Positions 15,568 through 58,285 of a stretch of 64,000 nucleotides of DNA are shown in pieces. The stretch's first letter is position 1, and each line of letters begins with the position of its first letter. The notes under the pieces were generated by a model, which worked only from the letters and a program-made list of their open reading frames with translations, was not told the origin of the DNA and ran no database searches. The stretch covers positions 188,877 to 252,876 of the IMG/VR virus record IMGVR_UViG_3300033143_006101; one strand, given 5' to 3'. The translations under genes and the position numbers were made by a program.

Positions 15568-17661
15568 TTAATTAACATAACTAATATTATCTTCTGTTTT
15601 TCTAACAGTTATTATCTGAGGAAAATCTTGGATATGATCCACATGCGAAATCACTAAGATTTGATCAAACCAATTCAATATCAAAGTAAGTACTTTTTGT
15701 ACCAAATATTTATTATGATTATCAAGAAATCCAAAGGGCTCATCTAAAGTAATAAGACCTAAATTAATTTTAGATCGGTACCTTATCACCTTTGAGAACC
15801 CAAGACGTAGACCTATATTTGCAACAACCTTTTCCCCACCAGAAAGCCGTTTATAACTTCTTTCCCTACCCGCGATTATAAAAGAGATAATAAGTCGTTT
15901 AGATTTACTAGTATCTTCAAAAATATTAACCGATATATCCGGTAATATCTGCTGAATTATTTCATTTGCAGCATCTTGGATTAGAATAACAGATTGCTGA
16001 AAGATATTACGTGGTATTTCTTGAAAAGCATTTATCAATATACCATGAAGATATATTGATTCTTCTGTTTCTTCTATATCATTATCAATATTTTCAATTT
16101 CTACTTCTAATTTATCCTTGTTCTTTTCTAATTGAGAAAGCTCACCGAGCTTCCTGTTTTTAACCTCTATAGATTCCTCCAGGAACTCCACATCTGCTTT
16201 CATTTTATCTAAGATAACTTTATCCGGAACAAAGTTATCTATAACTTTTTCTATTTCACGTATTTGCTTCTTTATACCAGAAACACTAAGCTCTGTTTCT
16301 CTATTCTTTTCCGTAGCCTGGTTCATTTGAAGTTCAAGCTTTTCAATATTCTGTTCTTTAAGTAATTTCTCCTTTTCCAATTCATTTTTATTTTTAATTA
16401 TATTAGCTAACATAGTCTCGGTAGCTGTAATACTTTCTTTAAATTCTTTTATAGTTTTTTCCAAATTTAATTTTCTAGTTTGAAAATCAGTTACATTTTT
16501 AGAAGTATCCGTAGCTAATCCAGTAAGCTCTATGATTTGTGCATTAAATTCTTTCTGCTTTTCTTGAAGATACTGCGGATCCACATCTTGAAAACAAGAA
16601 GGGCATACTCCCTCTTTCATTTTACTTTTAGATTCTGTTAATAATCGTATTCTAGTCGAGTACTCTGCTAATACTACATTATATTTATTTAGCTGTTGAT
16701 TAATATCCCCTAACTTATTTTCTACAATATCCTGTTCCGTTTTTAAACTACTTATCTGCGTATCATCAAAATCACCCCTCTCACCTACCGCTTTTAATTT
16801 ATTTGTAATTTCAATTATATCAAGTTGATCGGTATTGATACTGTTTGTAAAAGATACTTTAATATCATCAAATTCTTTTAACCCTTTTTCCGCATCAAAC
16901 CTTTGCTGTCGCAATTCATTTAATTTAATAGTAAATTGTAAAGAATTATCATATTTAATTATCTCATCTTGTAGCTCTTTTTTCTTCTTCTTTAAATCAT
17001 CAAGCTCTGCAGCTATTGTTTTCTTTTCCGCTACTTTTATTTTAAGATCATCCATTTCCTCAATTTTTATTTTAGAGGTTTCAACTAATGTTTTCCTTGC
17101 ACTAATTAATAACTTATTGGCTTTATTAGCAGTCTTGTATGCAATTCTCCAAATCTCAAGATCTAATACCTTATCAACATAATTACGTCTTTCTTCTGGT
17201 GTAGCATTAATAAAGTTATCTATGTTTCCCTGTTCGAAAAAATTCGATGCAGTGCACATCTTATAATCCATACCCAAAACACGTATAATTTCCTCCTGGG
17301 TATGTTCTATTCTTTCTTTTGTTAAGGGAACATCATTTTCATAAAAATCTAGGTAGGATGAAGATTTAACACGACCGCGTTCTACTCTATATTGTTGACT
17401 GTTTAAAGTAAACTCGAGACGCACAAACATTTCTTTATCTGTAAGCGAATCATTAACAATCTCATCTAACTTGCTAAATTCTCCCTCACCAAACAGAGCA
17501 TAGATTATCGCCATTACTAATGTGGACTTACCAGATCCATTGGATCTATTTTCATTATTATCATAGACCCCGATAATCCCAGTGATACCATCCTGAAATT
17601 CAACTACATTATGCTCCTTATACGAACCAAAACCCTTTAATTCTAAACGGTTAATTTTCAT
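15568..17661 (-). CDS. sbcC: SbcC/Rad50-like (gp46-like) ATPase
   Basis: NGSGKSTL, zinc hook CPSC, LSGGE signature, LDEPF Walker B, ISH. Confidence 0.9.
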   Translation of the reverse strand: MKINRLELKGFGSYKEHNVVEFQDGITGIIGVYDNNENRSNGSGKSTLVMAIIYALFGEGEFSKLDEIVNDSLTDKEMFVRLEFTLNSQQYRVERGRVKSSSYLDFYENDVPLTKERIEHTQEEIIRVLGMDYKMCTASNFFEQGNIDNFINATPEERRNYVDKVLDLEIWRIAYKTANKANKLLISARKTLVETSKIKIEEMDDLKIKVAEKKTIAAELDDLKKKKKELQDEIIKYDNSLQFTIKLNELRQQRFDAEKGLKEFDDIKVSFTNSINTDQLDIIEITNKLKAVGERGDFDDTQISSLKTEQDIVENKLGDINQQLNKYNVVLAEYSTRIRLLTESKSKMKEGVCPSCFQDVDPQYLQEKQKEFNAQIIELTGLATDTSKNVTDFQTRKLNLEKTIKEFKESITATETMLANIIKNKNELEKEKLLKEQNIEKLELQMNQATEKNRETELSVSGIKKQIREIEKVIDNFVPDKVILDKMKADVEFLEESIEVKNRKLGELSQLEKNKDKLEVEIENIDNDIEETEESIYLHGILINAFQEIPRNIFQQSVILIQDAANEIIQQILPDISVNIFEDTSKSKRLIISFIIAGRERSYKRLSGGEKVVANIGLRLGFSKVIRYRSKINLGLITLDEPFGFLDNHNKYLVQKVLTLILNWFDQILVISHVDHIQDFPQIITVRKTEDNISYVN

Positions 17662-39702: not shown

Positions 39703-40866
39703 ATGTGGGCAGAAGGAATTGAAAGAAAGTCCGTGGCAAATGTTACTCCAAGTAAATATGATGAGAGACTTCTTAATCCTAAAGCTTTCGGTGGAATGAA
39801 TACTGCAGGTAAGCACACTGCTTCTGCAGAAGACATGTTTAACTCTAAGGGAGAACTTAATGCTTATAGCAAAGAAGACGCTATAAATCAGCAAATGAGA
39901 TTCGCTCAACTTAGAGCTAATTACCAAAGACCTGGAAAACAAGCCCAGTCTTACTTCACACCAGAAGAAAGACAAAGAATAGTTGAATCCGTTTTTGCTG
40001 CTGATGAGCAGGAAAGACTTAGATTCGGTGCGGAGATGATCCCATTGATTCTTGACAGATTGGACTATGAAGGTTTTATTCGTCAGGTTTTTAGAACCCA
40101 TCAACTTGCACAAGGACAGATTAACTCCTATGAAAAGGACGTTAATGTTACTGCTCTTGTAATACATGAAGATGGTCAGACAATCGAAAGCGTAGTTAAA
40201 GGTAATAGAATTTTCCCACCAGAATTCTTAGTAACAGCAATGCCAAAAATTACTATCTCTGAAATCGCAACACGTCAATACGACATAGTAGATAGAACAC
40301 ATGACAAGACTACTTTCCAAATCATGCTAACTGAGGACAGAAATGGTCTTAGAGAATTGTATCAGTCAGCTACATTAGAGAACTCACTAATTAACGTGAC
40401 TTCAACAATTAGCAAGAGTGTTCTTGAAACACTACAATACGAAGTCGAAAGACACAGATTGCTCGTTGATAAGTTTATTATGAACAGAGCTGAACTTGGT
40501 GACTTGAAGAAAAATATTAACGCAATTGATTACGATCCAATCACATCTCGTGACCTGTTATTAACAGGTATATTTGGATCAATCTGGGGAGTTAACATCT
40601 ATGTAACAGCTGGTGTTGACGAAGCAGGTATTGAAAACGTATCTGTACCAGAAGGAATGATCTTCGCAGTAACAGAAGGAAGATATTTAGGAGCAATGCC
40701 TATTAGGGTTGACCTTACTGTACTTCCTGCAGATCAATTCATTTTTGGAGCACCTCAATATGGTTGGTTGTTCGTTGAGCAAATTTCTCAAGTTGTTGTT
40801 AATCCAAGATCTGTAGCGTGTGCCGTTAAGAGCAGTGCGACCGTGCCTCAGTGGATGAGTGCATAG
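39703..40866 (+). CDS. Major capsid protein (HK97-like)
   Basis: 387 aa, highly expressed-type codons, RLDYEGFIRQ / PEF...P.I...EI..RQYDIVDR / GIFGSIWGVNI pattern; followed by a strong terminator. Confidence 0.85.
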   Translation: MWAEGIERKSVANVTPSKYDERLLNPKAFGGMNTAGKHTASAEDMFNSKGELNAYSKEDAINQQMRFAQLRANYQRPGKQAQSYFTPEERQRIVESVFAADEQERLRFGAEMIPLILDRLDYEGFIRQVFRTHQLAQGQINSYEKDVNVTALVIHEDGQTIESVVKGNRIFPPEFLVTAMPKITISEIATRQYDIVDRTHDKTTFQIMLTEDRNGLRELYQSATLENSLINVTSTISKSVLETLQYEVERHRLLVDKFIMNRAELGDLKKNINAIDYDPITSRDLLLTGIFGSIWGVNIYVTAGVDEAGIENVSVPEGMIFAVTEGRYLGAMPIRVDLTVLPADQFIFGAPQYGWLFVEQISQVVVNPRSVACAVKSSATVPQWMSA

Positions 40867-43760: not shown

Positions 43761-44642
43761 ATGAAAATAACAATTTTAGGTTGTGGAAACGCTTTTAGTA
43801 AAATCAATTATAATCAATGCTTTCTGCTAGAAGCTGACAGTAGAAAAATGTTAATTGATTTTGGAGCTAAGGCTCCTCTTGCTTTACATAATGCTGGTAT
43901 AGATATCAAAGAAATTGATGATGTCTATATCTCTCATTTACATGGGGATCATATTGGTGGTCTTGAAGAAATGGCATTTTTACGTTATGATTGGTATAAT
44001 AGACCAGTGCATTATAATGAAAGATCTATTAAAGACGCTCCTCCAAAATTGATTGCTAATGAACATTTGATGGGTGATCTTTGGAAAAAATCATTGTGTG
44101 GTGGATTAGATTCAATGGAAGGTTTTGATGCTACATTAGAGACATATTTTATACCTAAACCAATAAAACCTAATAAAACATTTAGATGGATGCAGTGGGA
44201 CTGTCAGCTGATACAACAAGTACACATTATGACAGGATCTATTATATCCAGTACATTTGGTTTATTTATGGAACAAAGTGGACATCCAACTATATATTTT
44301 ACTACAGATAGTCAACATTGCTCCCCGCGACAAGTAGAGATATTTTATGCTAAAGCAGATATAATCTTTCAAGATTGTGAATGTATTGGTGTAGATACTA
44401 AAGAAATGGAATTTAAATTCAGTTCGGGAATACATGCTAATTATGCTCAATTATCTGGTTGGAAATCAGCTAATAATGTTGTACTTTCTGATGAGATTAG
44501 AGCTAAAATGTGGCTCAGTCATTATCAAGATTTTGTTACAGAAGATAAAGACTTCTTCGGTAATGTTTGTGATTGGACCGGAATGTCTTGTGCTGACGGA
44601 TTTAAAGGGTTTCTTACAGTCGGACAAGAAATAGAAGTATAA
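43761..44642 (+). CDS. Metallo-beta-lactamase-fold hydrolase, Apyc1-like
   Basis: LGCGNAFSK, LIDFG..APLALH, SHLHGDHIGGLEE, IFQDCE, IHA, MWLSHYQD. Confidence 0.75.
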   Translation: MKITILGCGNAFSKINYNQCFLLEADSRKMLIDFGAKAPLALHNAGIDIKEIDDVYISHLHGDHIGGLEEMAFLRYDWYNRPVHYNERSIKDAPPKLIANEHLMGDLWKKSLCGGLDSMEGFDATLETYFIPKPIKPNKTFRWMQWDCQLIQQVHIMTGSIISSTFGLFMEQSGHPTIYFTTDSQHCSPRQVEIFYAKADIIFQDCECIGVDTKEMEFKFSSGIHANYAQLSGWKSANNVVLSDEIRAKMWLSHYQDFVTEDKDFFGNVCDWTGMSCADGFKGFLTVGQEIEV

Positions 44643-50358: not shown

Positions 50359-50775
50359 ATGTCGTATAAAAATAAGCAAAGGCAATTAGAATACCAACGA
50401 AACTGGATGAGGAAAAGAAGAAATATGTTTTTTTCAGGTAAAGTTTGTGCGAAATGTGGGTCTTCAAAAAAATTGGTATTACATCATATAAATCCAGAAG
50501 AAAAAGAAAGTCATTATGTTTGGTCGTGGTCAGAAAAACGAAGAGAAGCAGAGCTTAAAAAATGTGTTGTTTGGTGCGAAAAGTGTCATATTGAATATCA
50601 TACAAATAAACGGAGATTAAAAAATATACATGGTACACGTACTGGATATAATAAGTATAAATGTCGTTGCGATGCTTGTATACAAGCTAATAGCCTATAT
50701 CAAAAACAATGGCGTAATCAAAAACAATTAGCTGGCGTTGTGTCCGAACTGGTTAGGTCATCGATTGCAACTTGA
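50359..50775 (+). CDS. HNH endonuclease (paralogue of 52502-52885); stop lies inside tRNA-Cys
   Basis: CAKCGS..LVLHHINP..K...ELKKCVVWCEKCH; HGTRTGY..CRC..C. Confidence 0.8.
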   Translation: MSYKNKQRQLEYQRNWMRKRRNMFFSGKVCAKCGSSKKLVLHHINPEEKESHYVWSWSEKRREAELKKCVVWCEKCHIEYHTNKRRLKNIHGTRTGYNKYKCRCDACIQANSLYQKQWRNQKQLAGVVSELVRSSIAT

Positions 50776-51486: not shown

Positions 51487-51487
51487 T

Positions 51488-51560
51488 GGGAGCGTAGCTC
51501 AATTGGGAGAGCGTCTGCCTTGCACGCAGAAGGTCGCGAGTTCGACTCTCGCCGCCTCCA
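51488..51560 (+). tRNA. tRNA-Ala(TGC)
   Basis: G3:U70, tctgc-ctTGCac-gcaga. Confidence 0.95.
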
Positions 51561-51581
51561 ATGGATCCATTAAGTTAGATC

Positions 51582-51695: not shown

Positions 51696-51836
51696 ATGTC
51701 ATCTTGTAACAAATTATTAACCACTGCATTATGGATGATTGCAGGGTGTCTCATAGCGATACTTTTAACCTTGTTCACTTTTATGAACAAGATGGATTTA
51801 ATACTTCAAACATTAAAAAGTATGGCTGTTCTTTAA
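51696..51836 (+). CDS. 46-aa single-TM hydrophobic peptide
   Basis: AGGAGG RBS; MSSCNKLLTTALWMIAGCLIAILLTLFTFMNKMDLILQTLKSMAVL*. Confidence 0.6.
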   Translation: MSSCNKLLTTALWMIAGCLIAILLTLFTFMNKMDLILQTLKSMAVL

Positions 51837-51840
51837 AGAC

Positions 51841-51979
51841 GGGGGAGTGCAGGCCAATGGTTGGCCATCTGATTTTGGGTCAGACAAAGCACTGCATTAA
51901 AGCTGTATCAACTTGAACCTTTTAGGTTCCATAAGAAACCAGCGTACAAGCATATCGGTTCGATTCCGACTCTCCCCCA
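51841..51979 (+). tRNA. tRNA-like gene 1 (TTG anticodon) with ~70-nt variable-loop module
   Basis: GGGGGAG/CTCCCCC, ggcc/ggcc D stem, tctga-ttTTGgg-tcaga, GGTTCGATTCC; insert 51885-51954. Confidence 0.8.
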
Positions 51980-51981
51980 CA

Positions 51982-52194
51982 TGGCTCAACTGGTATAGCC
52001 AATCAGTTAAACGCAGAGATAACAGGCTCCTTTGAAAAAAACATGAGAGTCTCTGACAAAGGAAAGTTGATCACTAAACCTTGATACAAATCGCATGCGT
52101 GTATCTGCCTTCCAGGAAAGACTGGTTTACCCTATGCTTTCATCGGCATCGCCTTCATCGGCGTGATAGGGGTTGACAGCTCGGAAAGACGGGC
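51982..52194 (+). ncRNA. ~210-nt multi-pseudoknot structured RNA candidate
   Basis: Two H-type pseudoknots, twin TTCATC-loop hairpins, two GGAAAGAC hairpins, no ORF of 60 aa or more. Confidence 0.65.
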
Positions 52195-52199
52195 AACAC

Positions 52200-52342
52200 G
52201 GCGAAGTAGCCAAGTTGGGTAAAGGCACTAGAATTGAAATCTAGCTAACAGCAGACTAACTAAATTAACTTGAACTCAGAAGAGTTCCCCATAACTTAGT
52301 TTACAAGCAAAATTATCGATGGTTCGAGTCCATCCTTCGCCA
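52200..52342 (+). tRNA. tRNA-like gene 2 (TGA anticodon) with 73-nt variable-loop module
   Basis: GGCGAAG/CTTCGCC, ctaga-atTGAaa-tctag, gatgg-TTCGAGT-ccatc; insert 52245-52317. Confidence 0.8.
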
Positions 52343-52344
52343 AT

Positions 52345-52481
52345 GCCCGAGAAGCTCATGGAGAGCACTTTTTCTACTAAAAAAGAGGTAACAATTCTTT
52401 TGGGTTATTTCAACTTGAACTCTTTAGAGTTCCATCGGAACTAACTTACAAGCATTTGCCGTTCGATTCGGCACTCGGGCT
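52345..52481 (+). tRNA. tRNA-like gene 3 (ambiguous ACT / 8-nt loop) with 71-nt variable-loop module
   Basis: GCCCGAG/CTCGGGC, 5-nt D-loop, ctttt-tctactaa-aaaag, tgccg-TTCGATT-cggca; insert 52386-52456. Confidence 0.75.
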
Positions 52482-52501: not shown

Positions 52502-52885
52502 ATGCCATACAAGGATAAGGAGAAGCAATCAGAGTATCAGTTGCAATGGATGAAAGCTAGAAGAAATGCTTTCTTTAATGGCAAGTGTTGTAAAAAATGT
52601 GGGTCTATGTTTAACTTAGTCTTACACCATAAAAACCCAGCCGAGAAAGAAGATCATAGGATATGGTCGTGGTCGGAAGAAAGAAGAAATGCAGAACTTA
52701 AAAAATGTGTTGTTTGGTGTTTATCATGTCACATAGAACATCATGCTGATAGACTGAGATTAAAAGAAATACACGGCACAAGAACTGGTTATAAGAATTA
52801 TGGGTGTCGATGTAAAAAATGCACACAAGCAAATACGGTTTACATAAGAAATTGGAATAGAAGAAAAAAAGGGGTATTCGTCTAG
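52502..52885 (+). CDS. HNH endonuclease; stop lies inside tRNA-Glu
   Basis: CKKCGS..LVLHHKNP...ELKKCVVWCLSCH. Confidence 0.8.
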   Translation: MPYKDKEKQSEYQLQWMKARRNAFFNGKCCKKCGSMFNLVLHHKNPAEKEDHRIWSWSEERRNAELKKCVVWCLSCHIEHHADRLRLKEIHGTRTGYKNYGCRCKKCTQANTVYIRNWNRRKKGVFV

Positions 52886-52943
52886 TGGACTAGGACATCG
52901 GGTTTTCAATCCGACAACAGGAGTTCAATTCTCCTATACCCTA
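52871..52943 (+). tRNA. tRNA-Glu(TTC)
   Basis: tcggg-ttTTCaa-tccga; GTCTAGTGG..AGGAC D arm. Confidence 0.93.
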
Positions 52944-55933: not shown

Positions 55934-55939
55934 CATAAA

Positions 55940-56372
55940 GCAAAATGCAGATACTGCTTTAGGAAGTTAGAGATACTTCTAAAAAACTCCGTACATACTA
56001 CGATAGTGTATGGGTGCTCTTTCTGCTGAGATCCTTATGGGAGTAGAATCACTAGGAGGCGAGACTGGTGAAAAACTAAAAACCGCCAGAAGACTAAAAA
56101 TGCTGCATCGTTTTTAGTCTGAGGTGCTTGATGGCGAAAGTTAGACGCTGAGTAAGGGCGGAAACGTCAAGAAAGCCGAGGTTGTGATATTAGCAACGAG
56201 CATATGGGTATCAAATCCCATTCAAGCACATCTCTGTTCGGATCGTTGGTCACTGTTTGGGTAGAATCCTTCTGAGATACCGTAATTCGATCTTTATGCC
56301 CAACATTGTGCATGCAGAGTAATCCTCGGACCGAATGTACCCCTTAAGGAAGGAGCTAAGGTTTGGGGTATT
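55940..56372 (+). ncRNA. ~430-nt structured RNA candidate containing a tRNA-like domain without an anticodon arm
   Basis: ORF-free, GC-enriched, serial hairpins; tRNA-like domain at 56124-56230. Confidence 0.65.
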
Positions 56373-56391
56373 TAATTGAAGGTATAATTAA

Positions 56392-56852
56392 ATGATAAAA
56401 AGATGGAAAGATAACGATATACTTATTATGAAAAGTATGATTAATGAAAAGACAAGCCCAGAAATTGCAGAGATATTTGAAACTTCTACTAAAGCAATTA
56501 ATAGTTTATTCACAAGAAGAAAAATTATTCGAAATAAAGAAATATCAAAAGAGCATGTTAGAAAAAGTTTGATAAAAAGAAATAAAAAAAATTATGGGGA
56601 TAAAAATGGTAACTGGAAAGGAGGAATATCAAAAAATAATTATCATTACAAAAAATTACAAATTGAAAAATTTCCAGAGAGAGAGTAAAGGCACGAGGTA
56701 AAGTGCATAAAGCAATTAAAAGCGGAAAGTTAAAAAGAAAACCATGTGAAATTTGTAATTCAAAAGATGTGCAGGCACATCATAATGATTATTCTAAACC
56801 ACTAGAGGTTAAATGGTTTTGTAGAAAACATCATAGAGAGTATGAACAATAG
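56392..56852 (+). pseudogene. HNH-type endonuclease frameshifted in an (AG)5 run; stop overlaps +1 of tRNA-Asp
   Basis: GDKNGNWKGG...FPER, then in another frame VKARGKVHKAIKSGKLKRKPCEIC...AHHNDYSKPLEVKWFCRKHH. Confidence 0.75.
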
Positions 56853-56923: not shown

Positions 56924-56926
56924 AAT

Positions 56927-57322
56927 TGTCAGGTAGGTTGCCTCACGAGAGGCTCGGCATTTGATAGTACCAATCCCGTAATTAGTAGGGCTATCAAATA
57001 CTGCTCGGTACTGGTTAGGGTCTGAGTCAGTTTGGTTTCTAGAAAAGCTAGATTATTATAGTTTCATCAGGTTATTAGGACCGCTTCGTGAAGCAACTTG
57101 GATGAACAACTTCTAGCTGATCATTCTGAAGAACTTGGCGGTTAGGGGAAACAGATGTGATAAGGATGAAGATTGAAACTAGGATCCAATTGTAAACTTA
57201 TCTTACTTAAAAATAGTAGAAGGGATTGAGGCGACTCCCACTCGGTTTATAATATTAAATAAACTCTAACTATTCTGAGTAAAAGCCTTCACCCTAGATT
57301 AGCGACCTGGGGCTATCTGACA
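56927..57322 (+). ncRNA. ~400-nt structured RNA candidate closed by a terminal helix
   Basis: TGTCAGGTAG/CTATCTGACA closing stem; many nested stems; ORF-free. Confidence 0.65.
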
Positions 57323-58285
57323 CAACTATGGATCCATAGTTATTTGGGGTATAATGATTAACGTATTTATGACAATACATCAGAAACAGCAATCTCTTAT
57401 TAGTCCAGAGGCTACTGATACTATTACTTCAATTTGTATTACAGCAATTATTATTTGTATTATATTATTTATATCTGTACTTTTTATGTTATATAGAAAT
57501 AAATGGATATTTGGTAATGCTCTTATTCTTTCAAGAATGGTGTTTGCAAGACAACTTAATACTCTAATGTTTCAAGAAGCAGAAATTTATACTAGTGAAG
57601 AATTGTATGCTAATAATTGGTCATATAATAAAATGCTTTTTTCAATTTGGGTATGGACACCACTAAAAATGGCTTATAATAAGAAAATGTTGGATTATGT
57701 TGTAATGGGTGTGTTACCTGATATTAGGGAAAGAATTATAGATGTTTCTATTGAAGAAGTCTGGAAGAAAAACCCAAAACCATGGGAAGCATTAAAAAAA
57801 AGAACTTATGGCTTTCTGTGCAATTGAAGGGTGTGTACAATGATTATAACAAATATTGCGATAGCTCTTATAACTATTTTAGTACTTATTGATGTTATAT
57901 TATTAACCGCTAATATTATGGATAAAGATAATAATCTAAGTATACTAAGCTGTATTGGTGGAATATTTATAATTGTACTTATTACATGGTTTATGATAGT
58001 AGCACCTACATTTAAGGATAGTGATAAAGAACTAAAGAGGTTAGAAATGTCATTAATAAAAGAACCAAAAGAAATGACTCTACATTCTTTGAATAAGGAA
58101 CTAGAAAAATATTATGATGAGCACGGTCGTGAATATGGAGAAGAAAGTAAGATATTCTACAAATGTGAATTAGAATTATTTGATAGAATAAGAGAAGCAA
58201 TTAAAGATGATAGAGAAACTCTAGTACTATTTGAGTTTACTAGAAAATTTGCTGAGATGAAATCAGCTTGTGCGGGGAATTAGAT

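What the first reader, a model, noticed from the sequence alone, without database searches (positions are those of the whole stretch)
51982..52194. Multi-pseudoknot RNA wedged between two of the extended tRNA-like genes
Seen: pseudoknot 1 is TGGCT/AGCCA with AACTGGT/ATCAGTT (51982-52008). Pseudoknot 2 is CAGAGA/TCTCTG with CCTTTG/CAAAGG. There is a GATACA/TGTATC stem. A CCCTAT/ATAGGG stem encloses two hairpins with the identical loop TTCATC, and two hairpins share GGAAAGAC (CCAGGAAAGACTGG, GCTCGGAAAGACGGGC). Inference: processing of the flanking tRNAs would release it as a discrete ~215-nt RNA. Twin loops suggest a dimeric protein target or antisense seeds, and it may partner the module-bearing tRNAs.
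Basis: partly seen in the sequence, partly recalled or inferred. Interest (0 to 1): 0.7.

Follow-up and report, generated by a model that had tools for sequence, protein, structure and literature searches.

The report
Orphan spacer between odd phage tRNAs
The 220-base stretch is a real, unusually GC-rich gap between two oversized tRNA genes of an uncultured jumbo phage, but the proposed pseudoknots are no better than chance, nothing like it exists in any relative, and its ends look like leftover pieces of tRNA genes rather than a new riboregulator.

Summary
The fold is not special. MFE z = 0.01, and counts of 5-7-nt complementary words match shuffles (P 0.2-0.6). Pseudoknot 1 is sterically impossible (loops of 1, 2 and 0 nt) and pseudoknot 2 is strained. 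What is non-random: GC of 46%, the highest of 78 non-coding segments in a 33% GC genome; short direct repeats (P about 0.02); and tRNA-derived ends. The 5' hairpin is an exact D-arm consensus. The last 30 nt copy the acceptor strand plus D-arm of the phage's own tRNA-Lys. There is no Rfam family, no paralogue and no homologue in 18 related phage records or in the pattern scans of viral and metagenome contigs. In relatives tRNA-Ala and tRNA-Glu are 4-76 nt apart; here they are 1309 nt apart. The element therefore lies inside a lineage-specific, HNH-associated insertion. Best reading: recombination debris of tRNA genes, co-transcribed and cut out by RNase P/Z as a by-product (confidence 0.5). 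A genuine stable small RNA, like T4 RNA C/D, is not excluded (0.27). Expression could not be tested.

The parts
51487..51561 (+). tRNA-Ala(TGC); left boundary of the lineage-specific insertion
   Evidence: ARAGORN and Rfam. In relatives G001 and G002 it lies 4 and 76 nt upstream of tRNA-Glu.
51696..51836 (+). 46-aa ORF for a hydrophobic peptide, with an AGGAGG ribosome-binding site; part of the insertion
   Evidence: GC 31%.
51841..51979 (+). Extended tRNA xT1, with a 43-nt module in its variable region and no encoded CCA
   Evidence: tRNA-Sec model 35.6 bits, below its cut-off. Module pattern. Acceptor pairing GGGGGAG/CTCCCCC read.
51980..52199 (+). The element: a 220-nt GC-rich inter-tRNA spacer
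   Evidence: Single copy in the genome.
   Evidence: Exact match to the D-arm consensus GCTCARYTGGTANAGC. Only 0.02 matches are expected in the 64-kb window, and the only other match is the D-arm of tRNA-Ala. 17 of 20 identical to positions 6-25 of a relative's tRNA-Val. P = 0.028.
52014..52062 (+).
   Evidence: The sequences are present. z = -0.35 for 52008-52066. A 1-nt loop would have to cross a 6-bp helix.
52083..52105 (+). GATACA/TGTATC hairpin with an 11-nt loop
   Evidence: It is not part of the centroid fold.
52112..52125 (+). Hairpin CCAG-GAAAGA-CTGG; its loop resembles the D-loop of the phage's tRNA-Lys
   Evidence: in the centroid. Loop comparison with tRNA-Lys GAAGGAC.
52130..52171 (+). 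Three-way junction: CCCTAT/ATAGGG enclosing two hairpins with TTCATC loops, which are a 15-nt tandem duplication (52136-47, 52151-62)
   Evidence: z = -1.71. Repeat family D9.
52170..52197 (+). Copy of the 5' third of tRNA-Lys(TTT): acceptor 5' strand plus D-arm, including hairpin 52179-52194; cut off where xT2 starts
   Evidence: Local alignment to positions 2-28 of the phage's own tRNA-Lys, about 23 of 28 identical with one gap. P = 0.042.
52200..52342 (+). Extended tRNA xT2
   Evidence: Rfam tRNA 53.1 bits, with an insert of about 70 nt.
52345..52481 (+). Extended tRNA xT3
   Evidence: Module pattern. Acceptor pairing GCCCGAG/CTCGGGC read.
52502..52885 (+). Small HNH endonuclease ORF that overlaps the start of tRNA-Glu; right end of the insertion
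   Evidence: Homologues at up to 61% identity lie in tRNA arrays of relatives, without the element.
52871..52943 (+). tRNA-Glu(TTC); right boundary of the insertion

Best explanation
The element is the spacer of a young, lineage-specific insertion in the phage's tRNA array. The insertion holds a small ORF, xT1, the spacer, xT2, xT3 and an HNH endonuclease gene, and it lies between tRNA-Ala and tRNA-Glu. At least at both ends, the spacer is built from truncated copies of tRNA genes. The 5' end is a D-arm whose acceptor strand is overwritten by xT1. The 3' end is the acceptor strand plus D-arm of a tRNA-Lys copy, cut off by xT2. In between lies a locally duplicated hairpin. I infer that recombination or endonuclease-driven gene conversion inside the array left these pieces. 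Their tRNA origin explains the high GC content and the many short hairpins, including the 'identical loops'. The stretch is probably co-transcribed with the array and cut out by RNase P (5' end of xT2) and RNase Z (3' end of xT1). That would give a by-product of about 220 nt with a hairpin near each end. No selected global fold, pseudoknot or trans-acting role is indicated. Shown here: the anatomy, the tRNA likeness of the ends, the uniqueness and the insertion. Inferred: the origin by recombination, transcription, excision and lack of function.
For: 1. Insertion: tRNA-Ala and tRNA-Glu are 4 nt apart in G001 and L060 and 76 nt apart in G002, but 1309 nt apart here.
2. 5' end: exact D-arm consensus at 51984-51999, with 0.02 matches expected in 64 kb.
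3. Both ends resemble 5' parts of tRNAs: P = 0.028 and 0.042. The four-part sum is 88 against 77.4 +/- 4.2 in shuffles (P = 0.02), and the reverse complement scores 78, at baseline.
4. The 3' end aligns to positions 2-28 of the phage's own tRNA-Lys, whose unusual D-loop GAAGGAC matches the GGAAAGAC loops.
5. The fold is not beyond chance.
6. There is no homologue or paralogue: own genome; BLAST in 5 relatives; nhmmer on their tRNA arrays; covariance model R1 on 18 relatives' records, only itself at 126 bits; loop pattern in viral and metagenome contigs. A copy from a sister sample is 100% identical.
7. Relatives' arrays also hold degenerate tRNA-like pieces and unique GC-rich spacers.
8. HNH genes are scattered through these arrays.
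Against: The tRNA-fragment signal is modest, and the D-arm pattern was chosen after I had seen the sequence. Rfam's tRNA model finds no partial tRNA in the element, and ARAGORN at 70% thresholds finds none. About 170 nt in the middle (52001-52169) have no identified origin. Being the most GC-rich non-coding segment of an AT-rich genome could equally reflect selection for RNA structure. A hairpin close to each processed end is what a stable RNA would have. Absence from relatives does not prove absence of function, because this part of the genome turns over fast: the neighbouring 195-aa and 369-aa ORFs also have no homologues.
Confidence: 0.5

Rival explanations
1. It is a genuine stable small RNA of the phage, released from the tRNA precursor by RNase P/Z and protected by terminal hairpins. 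Its paired loops (2 x GAAAGA, 2 x UUCAUC) or its D-arm mimicry would bind or decoy a host or phage protein, by analogy with T4 RNA C/D or tRNA-mimicking Y-like RNAs.
For: It has the highest GC of 78 non-coding segments. It lies on the sense strand of the array with no internal promoter-like or terminator-like site. The centroid fold keeps four hairpins in the 3' half, and there is a hairpin 3 nt from the predicted 5' end and one 5 nt from the 3' end. Loop repeats are enriched (P about 0.02). T4 RNA C and D show that such RNAs exist and can remain unexplained (PMC9697503).
Against: z-scores are near zero. There are no homologues and so no covariation. There is no Rfam family. The phage has no Ro/TROVE or CsrA partner. 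The repeats are explained by a tandem duplication and by D-arm copies.
Confidence: 0.27
2. It is a base-pairing partner or regulator of the module-bearing tRNAs xT1-xT4, with the loops acting as antisense seeds.
For: Only its position between xT1 and xT2, and the fact that both the element and the module are unique to this phage.
Against: Local alignments to xT1-4 are at shuffle level (P 0.51-0.79). Duplex energies are at shuffle level (P 0.42-0.73). xT4 lies about 68 kb away without any copy of the element.
Confidence: 0.04
3. It is a decayed or unconventional coding region. Frame +0 has a single stop, and the TTCATCGGC repeat reads as a hydrophobic AFIGIAFIGVIGV stretch.
For: Frame +0 has one TGA in 73 codons, and the peptide segment is hydrophobic.
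Against: There is no ATG, GTG or TTG start before the hydrophobic part, and no ribosome-binding site. The GC-ending codons (TTC, ATC, GGC) are atypical for a 33% GC genome. Long intact ORFs under table 11 give no sign of TGA recoding. The frame runs into xT2.
Confidence: 0.04
4. It is a remnant of, or an undescribed, catalytic or intron-like RNA. Relatives carry 213-401-nt inserts in tRNA anticodon loops.
For: ARAGORN calls tRNAs with inserts of 213, 229 and 401 nt in G002 and G003. The sizes are similar, and the spacers are GC-rich and rich in hairpins.
Against: The element lies between two complete tRNAs, not inside one. It matches no intron or ribozyme family even at E <= 10. It shows no similarity to the relatives' inserts or spacers. 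One caveat applies: Rfam also failed to recognise the relatives' inserts, so this negative result is weak.
Confidence: 0.05

Closest known systems
Phage T4 RNA C and RNA D (stable small RNAs encoded in the T4 tRNA region)
   Same: A non-tRNA RNA encoded among phage tRNA genes, presumably matured by the tRNA-processing enzymes, with no known function. That their function is still unknown is stated in PMC9697503. Their location in the tRNA cluster is from my own knowledge.
   Different: The T4 RNAs are shown to be expressed and stable, and they are conserved among T4-like phages. Here expression is untested and no homologue exists. No sequence comparison with them was made.
Pseudo-tRNAs and tRNA gene fragments in phage tRNA arrays that carry homing endonucleases (for example the T4 SegB region and the T5 tRNA region)
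   Same: Truncated tRNA pieces lie next to intact tRNAs in an array interspersed with HNH genes. Relatives show degenerate tRNA-like spacers.
   Different: Only the two ends (about 20 and 28 nt) are recognisably tRNA-derived, and the central 170 nt are unexplained. The link to endonuclease activity is an inference. The T4 and T5 examples are from my own knowledge.
Bacterial Y-like RNAs (YrlA, Rfam RF02553) that mimic tRNA arms
   Same: They contain D-arm-like hairpins outside a tRNA.
   Different: The element has no T-arm and no long terminal stem. The only weak YrlA hit (19.6 bits against a cut-off of 69) lies on the xT2/xT3 junction, not on the element. The phage has no Ro/TROVE gene.
manA RNA motif of cyanophage tRNA-rich regions
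   Same: A phage setting near tRNA genes, with several hairpins.
   Different: No family, manA included, reached E <= 10 on the element.

Membership tests
Any Rfam 15 family (including manA, wcaG, YrlA, T-box, group I intron, small ribozymes) | Covariance-model score at or above the family's gathering threshold | tested here: not met
   Nothing in 51980-52199 at gathering thresholds. At E <= 10 only Flavi_CRE (20.2 bits against 42) and two snoRNA models at about 10 bits appear, all chance-level.
H-type pseudoknot | Two interleaved helices whose connecting loops are long enough to cross the helices | tested here: not met
   PK1 has loops of 1, 2 and 0 nt for helices of 5 and 7 bp. PK2 has loops of 9, 15 and 1 nt for two 6-bp helices. 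Coordinates are; the geometry is my reasoning.
Structured RNA in general | Folding energy lower than that of dinucleotide shuffles | tested here: not met
   z = 0.01 for the whole element, 0.14 for the 5' half, -0.90 for the 3' half and -1.71 for the three-way junction.
Structured RNA in general | Base pairs kept by compensatory changes in homologues | not testable with these tools
   No homologue found. The only other copy is 100% identical.
tRNA or pseudo-tRNA | Cloverleaf recognised by a tRNA model | tested here: not met
   No tRNA hit in the element with Rfam or with ARAGORN at 70% thresholds.
tRNA gene fragment | Local sequence identity to defined tRNA parts, beyond shuffles, on the sense strand only | tested here: met
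   Exact D-arm consensus at 51984-51999 (0.02 expected in 64 kb). The ends score P = 0.028 and 0.042. The four-part sum gives P = 0.02 and the reverse complement is at baseline. Modest and partly post hoc.
T4 RNA C/D-like stable RNA of a phage tRNA cluster | A discrete, abundant transcript matured from the tRNA precursor | not testable with these tools
   No run holding this phage was listed. The one run found holds only a relative and covers only tRNA-Ala and tRNA-Glu.
T4 RNA C/D-like stable RNA of a phage tRNA cluster | Conservation among related phages | tested here: not met
   Absent from 18 related records with 66-88% major-capsid-protein identity.
Y RNA / YrlA | Ro (TROVE) protein partner, a terminal stem, and a tRNA-like domain with a T-arm | tested here: not met
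   No TROVE gene in the phage. No YrlA hit on the element.

The most novel reading that the evidence does not exclude
The spacer is a new phage-specific small RNA, assembled from tRNA D-arm copies and duplicated hairpins and released by tRNA processing. It would act as a decoy or sponge for a host factor that recognises tRNA arms, for example a tRNA-targeting defence nuclease or a modification enzyme, and would work together with the module-bearing tRNAs of the same cassette.
Probability: 0.1. Interest if true: 0.6.

Novelty: new member of a known kind. Interest (0 to 1): 0.25.

Why it matters
If the debris reading is right, the stretch is ordinary. It shows how HNH-rich phage tRNA arrays grow by insertion and leave GC-rich, hairpin-rich tRNA fragments. 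An unaided reader, or a structure-hunting program, can mistake such fragments for riboregulators, which makes this a useful negative example. If instead it is a stable RNA, it would join T4 RNA C/D as an unexplained product of a phage tRNA cluster, here visibly built from tRNA parts, and could bear on tRNA-directed phage-host conflict. The more interesting objects are its neighbours: four tRNAs that carry one conserved 43-nt module at two different positions.

Tried and rejected
1. Known families. Rfam at gathering thresholds and at E <= 10, on the window, the region and the element alone, found nothing.
2. Homologues by DNA. All of these were negative: blastn against 50,697 phage records, which found only tRNA-Ala; the own genome; BLAST in 5 relatives; nhmmer on relatives' tRNA arrays; a covariance model of the 3' domain on 18 relatives' records; and the four-loop pattern in viral contigs. 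The same pattern in metagenome contigs gave one hit, a coding GKTS repeat, so a chance match.
3. Homologues by neighbours. The 195-aa and 369-aa flanking ORFs have no relatives. HNH homologues lie in tRNA arrays without the element. One of those contigs could not be read.
4. Co-occurrence with the tRNA module. The module pattern gave only chance hits in viral contigs, none in metagenome contigs and one coding chance hit in genome contigs.
5. Expression. No run holding the phage was listed. Run X1 holds a relative only.
6. Antisense or partner role. No similarity to, or duplex with, xT1-4.
7. Decayed extended tRNA. No significant alignment to xT1-4.
8. Rest of the tRNA-Lys copy downstream of the cassette. 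Not found.
9. Terminal repeats of a mobile cassette. None convincing.
10. Small ORF or recoding. Rejected.
11. Protein partners or RNA repair and splicing enzymes in the phage (RtcB, splicing endonuclease, Rnl1, TROVE, CsrA). None found. The Rnl1 search had no positive control, so that one is uninformative.
12. Similarity among the GC-rich spacers of different relatives. None.

Full report
Setting. The window is the last 64 kb of a 252,876-bp IMG/VR virus record with direct terminal repeats and 33.3% GC. Its major capsid protein (39703-40866, PHROG 2522) has 168 metagenomic homologues at E <= 1e-20. The 120 listed are 61-100% identical to it. The nearest deposited genome is only 38% identical. 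A bacterial host is likely. The evidence is an Amidase_2 endolysin and an anti-Pycsar-like gene nearby, a cold-shock protein gene and strong AGGAGG ribosome-binding sites. That host assignment is an inference. About 27 tRNA genes form an array that runs over the record's ends, interspersed with small ORFs and HNH endonuclease genes.

The observation. The stretch 51980-52199 does lie between two oversized tRNAs. xT1 (51841-51979) has acceptor pairing GGGGGAG/CTCCCCC and scores 35.6 bits on the tRNA-Sec model, below its cut-off. xT2 (52200-52342) scores 53.1 bits on the tRNA model with an insert of about 70 nt. A third extended tRNA, xT3 (52345-52481), follows after 2 nt, and then comes an HNH ORF (52502-52885).

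Is the pairing more than chance? No. The whole element folds at -53.1 kcal/mol against -53.15 +/- 4.5 for dinucleotide shuffles, z = 0.01. The 5' half gives z = 0.14, the 3' half -0.90 and the three-way junction -1.71. Counts of perfectly complementary 5-, 6- and 7-mers are 26, 7 and 1, against 21.1, 5.2 and 1.3 in 1000 shuffles (P = 0.20, 0.30, 0.62).

Pseudoknot 1 has connecting loops of 1, 2 and 0 nt. A 0-nt loop cannot cross a 5-bp helix, and a 1-nt loop cannot span both helices in the alternative stacking. The two helices are therefore mutually exclusive. Pseudoknot 2 has a 1-nt loop opposite a 6-bp helix and is at best strained. This is my reasoning from H-type pseudoknot geometry, not a computed result.

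What is not chance. First, composition. The element has 46.4% GC (54% in its 3' half), while the ORFs around it have 29-36%. It is the most GC-rich of the 78 non-coding segments of at least 150 nt in the genome (mean 32%, sd 5%). Second, short direct repeats are enriched (P = 0.021-0.027 for 6-8-mers). The two TTCATC hairpins are a 15-nt tandem duplication (52136-47 and 52151-62), and GGAAAGAC occurs twice.

Third, and most informative, the ends are pieces of tRNA genes.
51984-51999 matches the consensus GCTCARYTGGTANAGC exactly. Only 0.02 such matches (allowing one mismatch) are expected in the whole 64-kb window, and the only other match is the D-arm of tRNA-Ala. With the preceding CATG it is 17/20 identical to positions 6-25 of a relative's tRNA-Val. 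The first five acceptor positions are missing, and in their place stands the 3' end of xT1.
- The last 28-30 nt (52170-52197) align to positions 2-28 of the phage's own tRNA-Lys(TTT), that is, acceptor 5' strand, two linker bases, D-stem, D-loop, D-stem and AAC. That tRNA has an unusual D-loop, GAAGGAC, which explains the GGAAAGAC loop. The copy breaks off where xT2 begins.
- The other GGAAAGAC hairpin (52112-25) has the same loop type.

Statistically the two end quarters score P = 0.028 and 0.042 against 88 tRNAs of this phage and its relatives. The sum over four quarters is 88 against 77.4 +/- 4.2 (P = 0.02), while the reverse complement scores 78, at baseline. These values are modest, and the D-arm pattern was written after I had seen the sequence. 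Rfam's tRNA model and relaxed ARAGORN see no partial tRNA. The central 170 nt have no identified origin.

Relatives. Using an alignment of capsid proteins I retrieved 27 related IMG/VR loci. I then searched whole records of 18 relatives with 66-88% capsid identity, among them records of 218, 161, 179 and 236 kb. BLAST gave nothing below E = 0.09. nhmmer on their tRNA arrays gave nothing below E = 45. A covariance model of the best-defined 3' domain found only the query itself, at 126 bits. A pattern requiring all four loops found nothing in viral contigs and one coding low-complexity repeat in 241 million metagenome records. A 3.7-kb contig from a sister sample is 100% identical, so no covariation can be assessed.

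Synteny is informative. tRNA-Ala(TGC) and tRNA-Glu(TTC) are 4 nt apart in G001 and in an ENA contig of the same lineage, and 76 nt apart in G002. The G002 spacer is itself a degenerate tRNA-like sequence. In this phage the two tRNAs are 1309 nt apart. A hairpin, a 46-aa ORF, xT1, the element, xT2, xT3 and the HNH gene are thus one lineage-specific insertion.

The 43-nt module of the extended tRNAs occurs three times here and once more in xT4 (genome c172989-172854). It was found in no other record. HNH homologues (up to 61% identical) sit between ordinary tRNA-Leu genes in relatives, without extended tRNAs or the element. Relatives' arrays hold their own unique GC-rich spacers and a 52-nt mini-tRNA. 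None of these resembles another.

Expression. No sequencing run holding this phage was listed. The single run found holds a distant relative and covers only tRNA-Ala and tRNA-Glu. Transcription and stability therefore remain untested. No promoter-like or terminator-like site lies inside the element, and xT1 encodes no CCA. From general knowledge of tRNA maturation, RNase Z after the xT1 discriminator and RNase P before G1 of xT2 would release 51980-52199. The D-arm hairpin would then start 3 nt from the new 5' end, and the last hairpin would end 5 nt from the 3' end.

Explanation. The most economical reading is that the element is recombination debris of tRNA genes inside a recently inserted, HNH-associated tRNA cassette. 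Truncated tRNA copies sit at both junctions with the extended tRNAs, a short tandem duplication lies inside, GC is still high because the pieces derive from tRNA genes and are young, and no global fold is selected. I put this at 0.5. A genuine stable small RNA, comparable with T4 RNA C and D, whose function is still unknown (PMC9697503), is not excluded (0.27). The top-ranking GC content and the end-proximal hairpins fit it. tRNA-derived arms could even be its working parts, but the phage encodes no Ro/TROVE or CsrA partner.

The antisense or partner idea has no support. A coding reading fails for lack of a start codon and because of atypical codons, although frame +0 has only one stop. An intron or ribozyme relic has no positive evidence. 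Rfam also missed the large tRNA inserts of relatives, so that negative result is weak.

Verdict. The element is best filed as a new instance of a known kind, a tRNA-fragment-bearing spacer in a phage tRNA array and possibly a processing by-product. Interest is low to moderate (0.25). The neighbouring module-bearing tRNAs deserve more attention than the spacer.

Noticed in passing
window 51841-51979, 52200-52342, 52345-52481; genome c172989-172854 (L055:755-890, minus strand): Four extended tRNAs (136-143 nt) share a 43-nt module (AACTTGAAC, a 7-8-nt variable stretch, GTTCC, 13-14 nt, TACAAGCA). It sits in the variable region of xT1-3 but between positions 31 and 32 of the anticodon arm in xT4, a tRNA-Pro(TGG). 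The module was found in no other record searched. The phage encodes no RtcB or splicing endonuclease.
   Followed up: partly
L017:16366-16491 and 16582-16707 (G002); L057 (G003:107861-108114): Relatives carry pairs of 124-127-nt tRNAs with a different 45-55-nt insert in or near the anticodon loop. The inserts share a core (TTGAC, TTGAC-like, then GTACG-like) and can form a long hairpin.
   Followed up: partly
G003 tRNA array (reverse complement of L057, 4443-4928); G002 array (reverse complement of L059+L053, 9763-10073 and 29609-29911): ARAGORN calls tRNAs with anticodon-loop inserts of 401 nt (tRNA-Leu(TAA), at position 35), 213 nt and 229 nt. These may be group I introns, but Rfam recognises neither intron nor tRNA there.
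   Followed up: partly
window 55935-56391 and 56924-57353: Two more GC-rich (40-42%) non-coding stretches lie after tRNA-Thr and after tRNA-Asp. The first lies next to split HNH-like ORFs (56392-56688, 56703-56852). No Rfam hit at E <= 1.
   Followed up: partly
L056:8721-8772 (G001): A 52-nt mini-tRNA-like sequence, apparently an acceptor stem plus D-arm plus T-arm with no anticodon arm, scores 30 bits on the tRNA model. It lies inside a non-coding stretch of about 330 nt (local GC peaks at 55%) after tRNA-Glu.
   Followed up: no
L016:13972-14045 (G001): A relative with 85% capsid identity encodes a tRNA with anticodon CTA, which reads TAG (ARAGORN labels it 'Pyl'). This is a possible amber suppressor. 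The window phage shows no sign of recoding.
   Followed up: no
genome 93500-104000 (L065): About 10 kb contain only nine ORFs of at least 90 aa and several GC-rich non-coding segments (40-44% GC). No Rfam hit at E <= 0.01.
   Followed up: partly
window 50359-50775 and 52502-52885; genome c172597-172310: Three paralogous small HNH ORFs lie in tRNA arrays. The two in the window run 15-42 nt into the 5' end of the next tRNA gene, tRNA-Cys and tRNA-Glu.
   Followed up: no
G002 array (reverse complement of L059+L053), 1369-1444: The 76-nt spacer between tRNA-Ala and tRNA-Glu of G002 looks like a degenerate tRNA: acceptor-like GAGTCAG/CTGACTC and a T-arm AGAAG-TTCGAAT-CTTCT. ARAGORN does not call it.
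   Followed up: no
window 43761-44642: This ORF matches Pfam Anti-Pycsar_Apyc1 / Lactamase_B in precomputed hits, so it may be an anti-defence nuclease for cyclic nucleotides.
   Followed up: no
window 52112-52197: Weak, below-threshold resemblance to the Flavivirus 3' UTR CRE model (20.2 bits against 42, E = 0.18), driven by the CCAGGAAAGACTGG hairpin. I judge it a chance match.
   Followed up: yes
genome c173100-173028: A tRNA-Asn with anticodon ATT (A34) lies in the small second tRNA cluster beside xT4. xT3 may also carry an A34 anticodon (ACT), by my manual reading.
   Followed up: no
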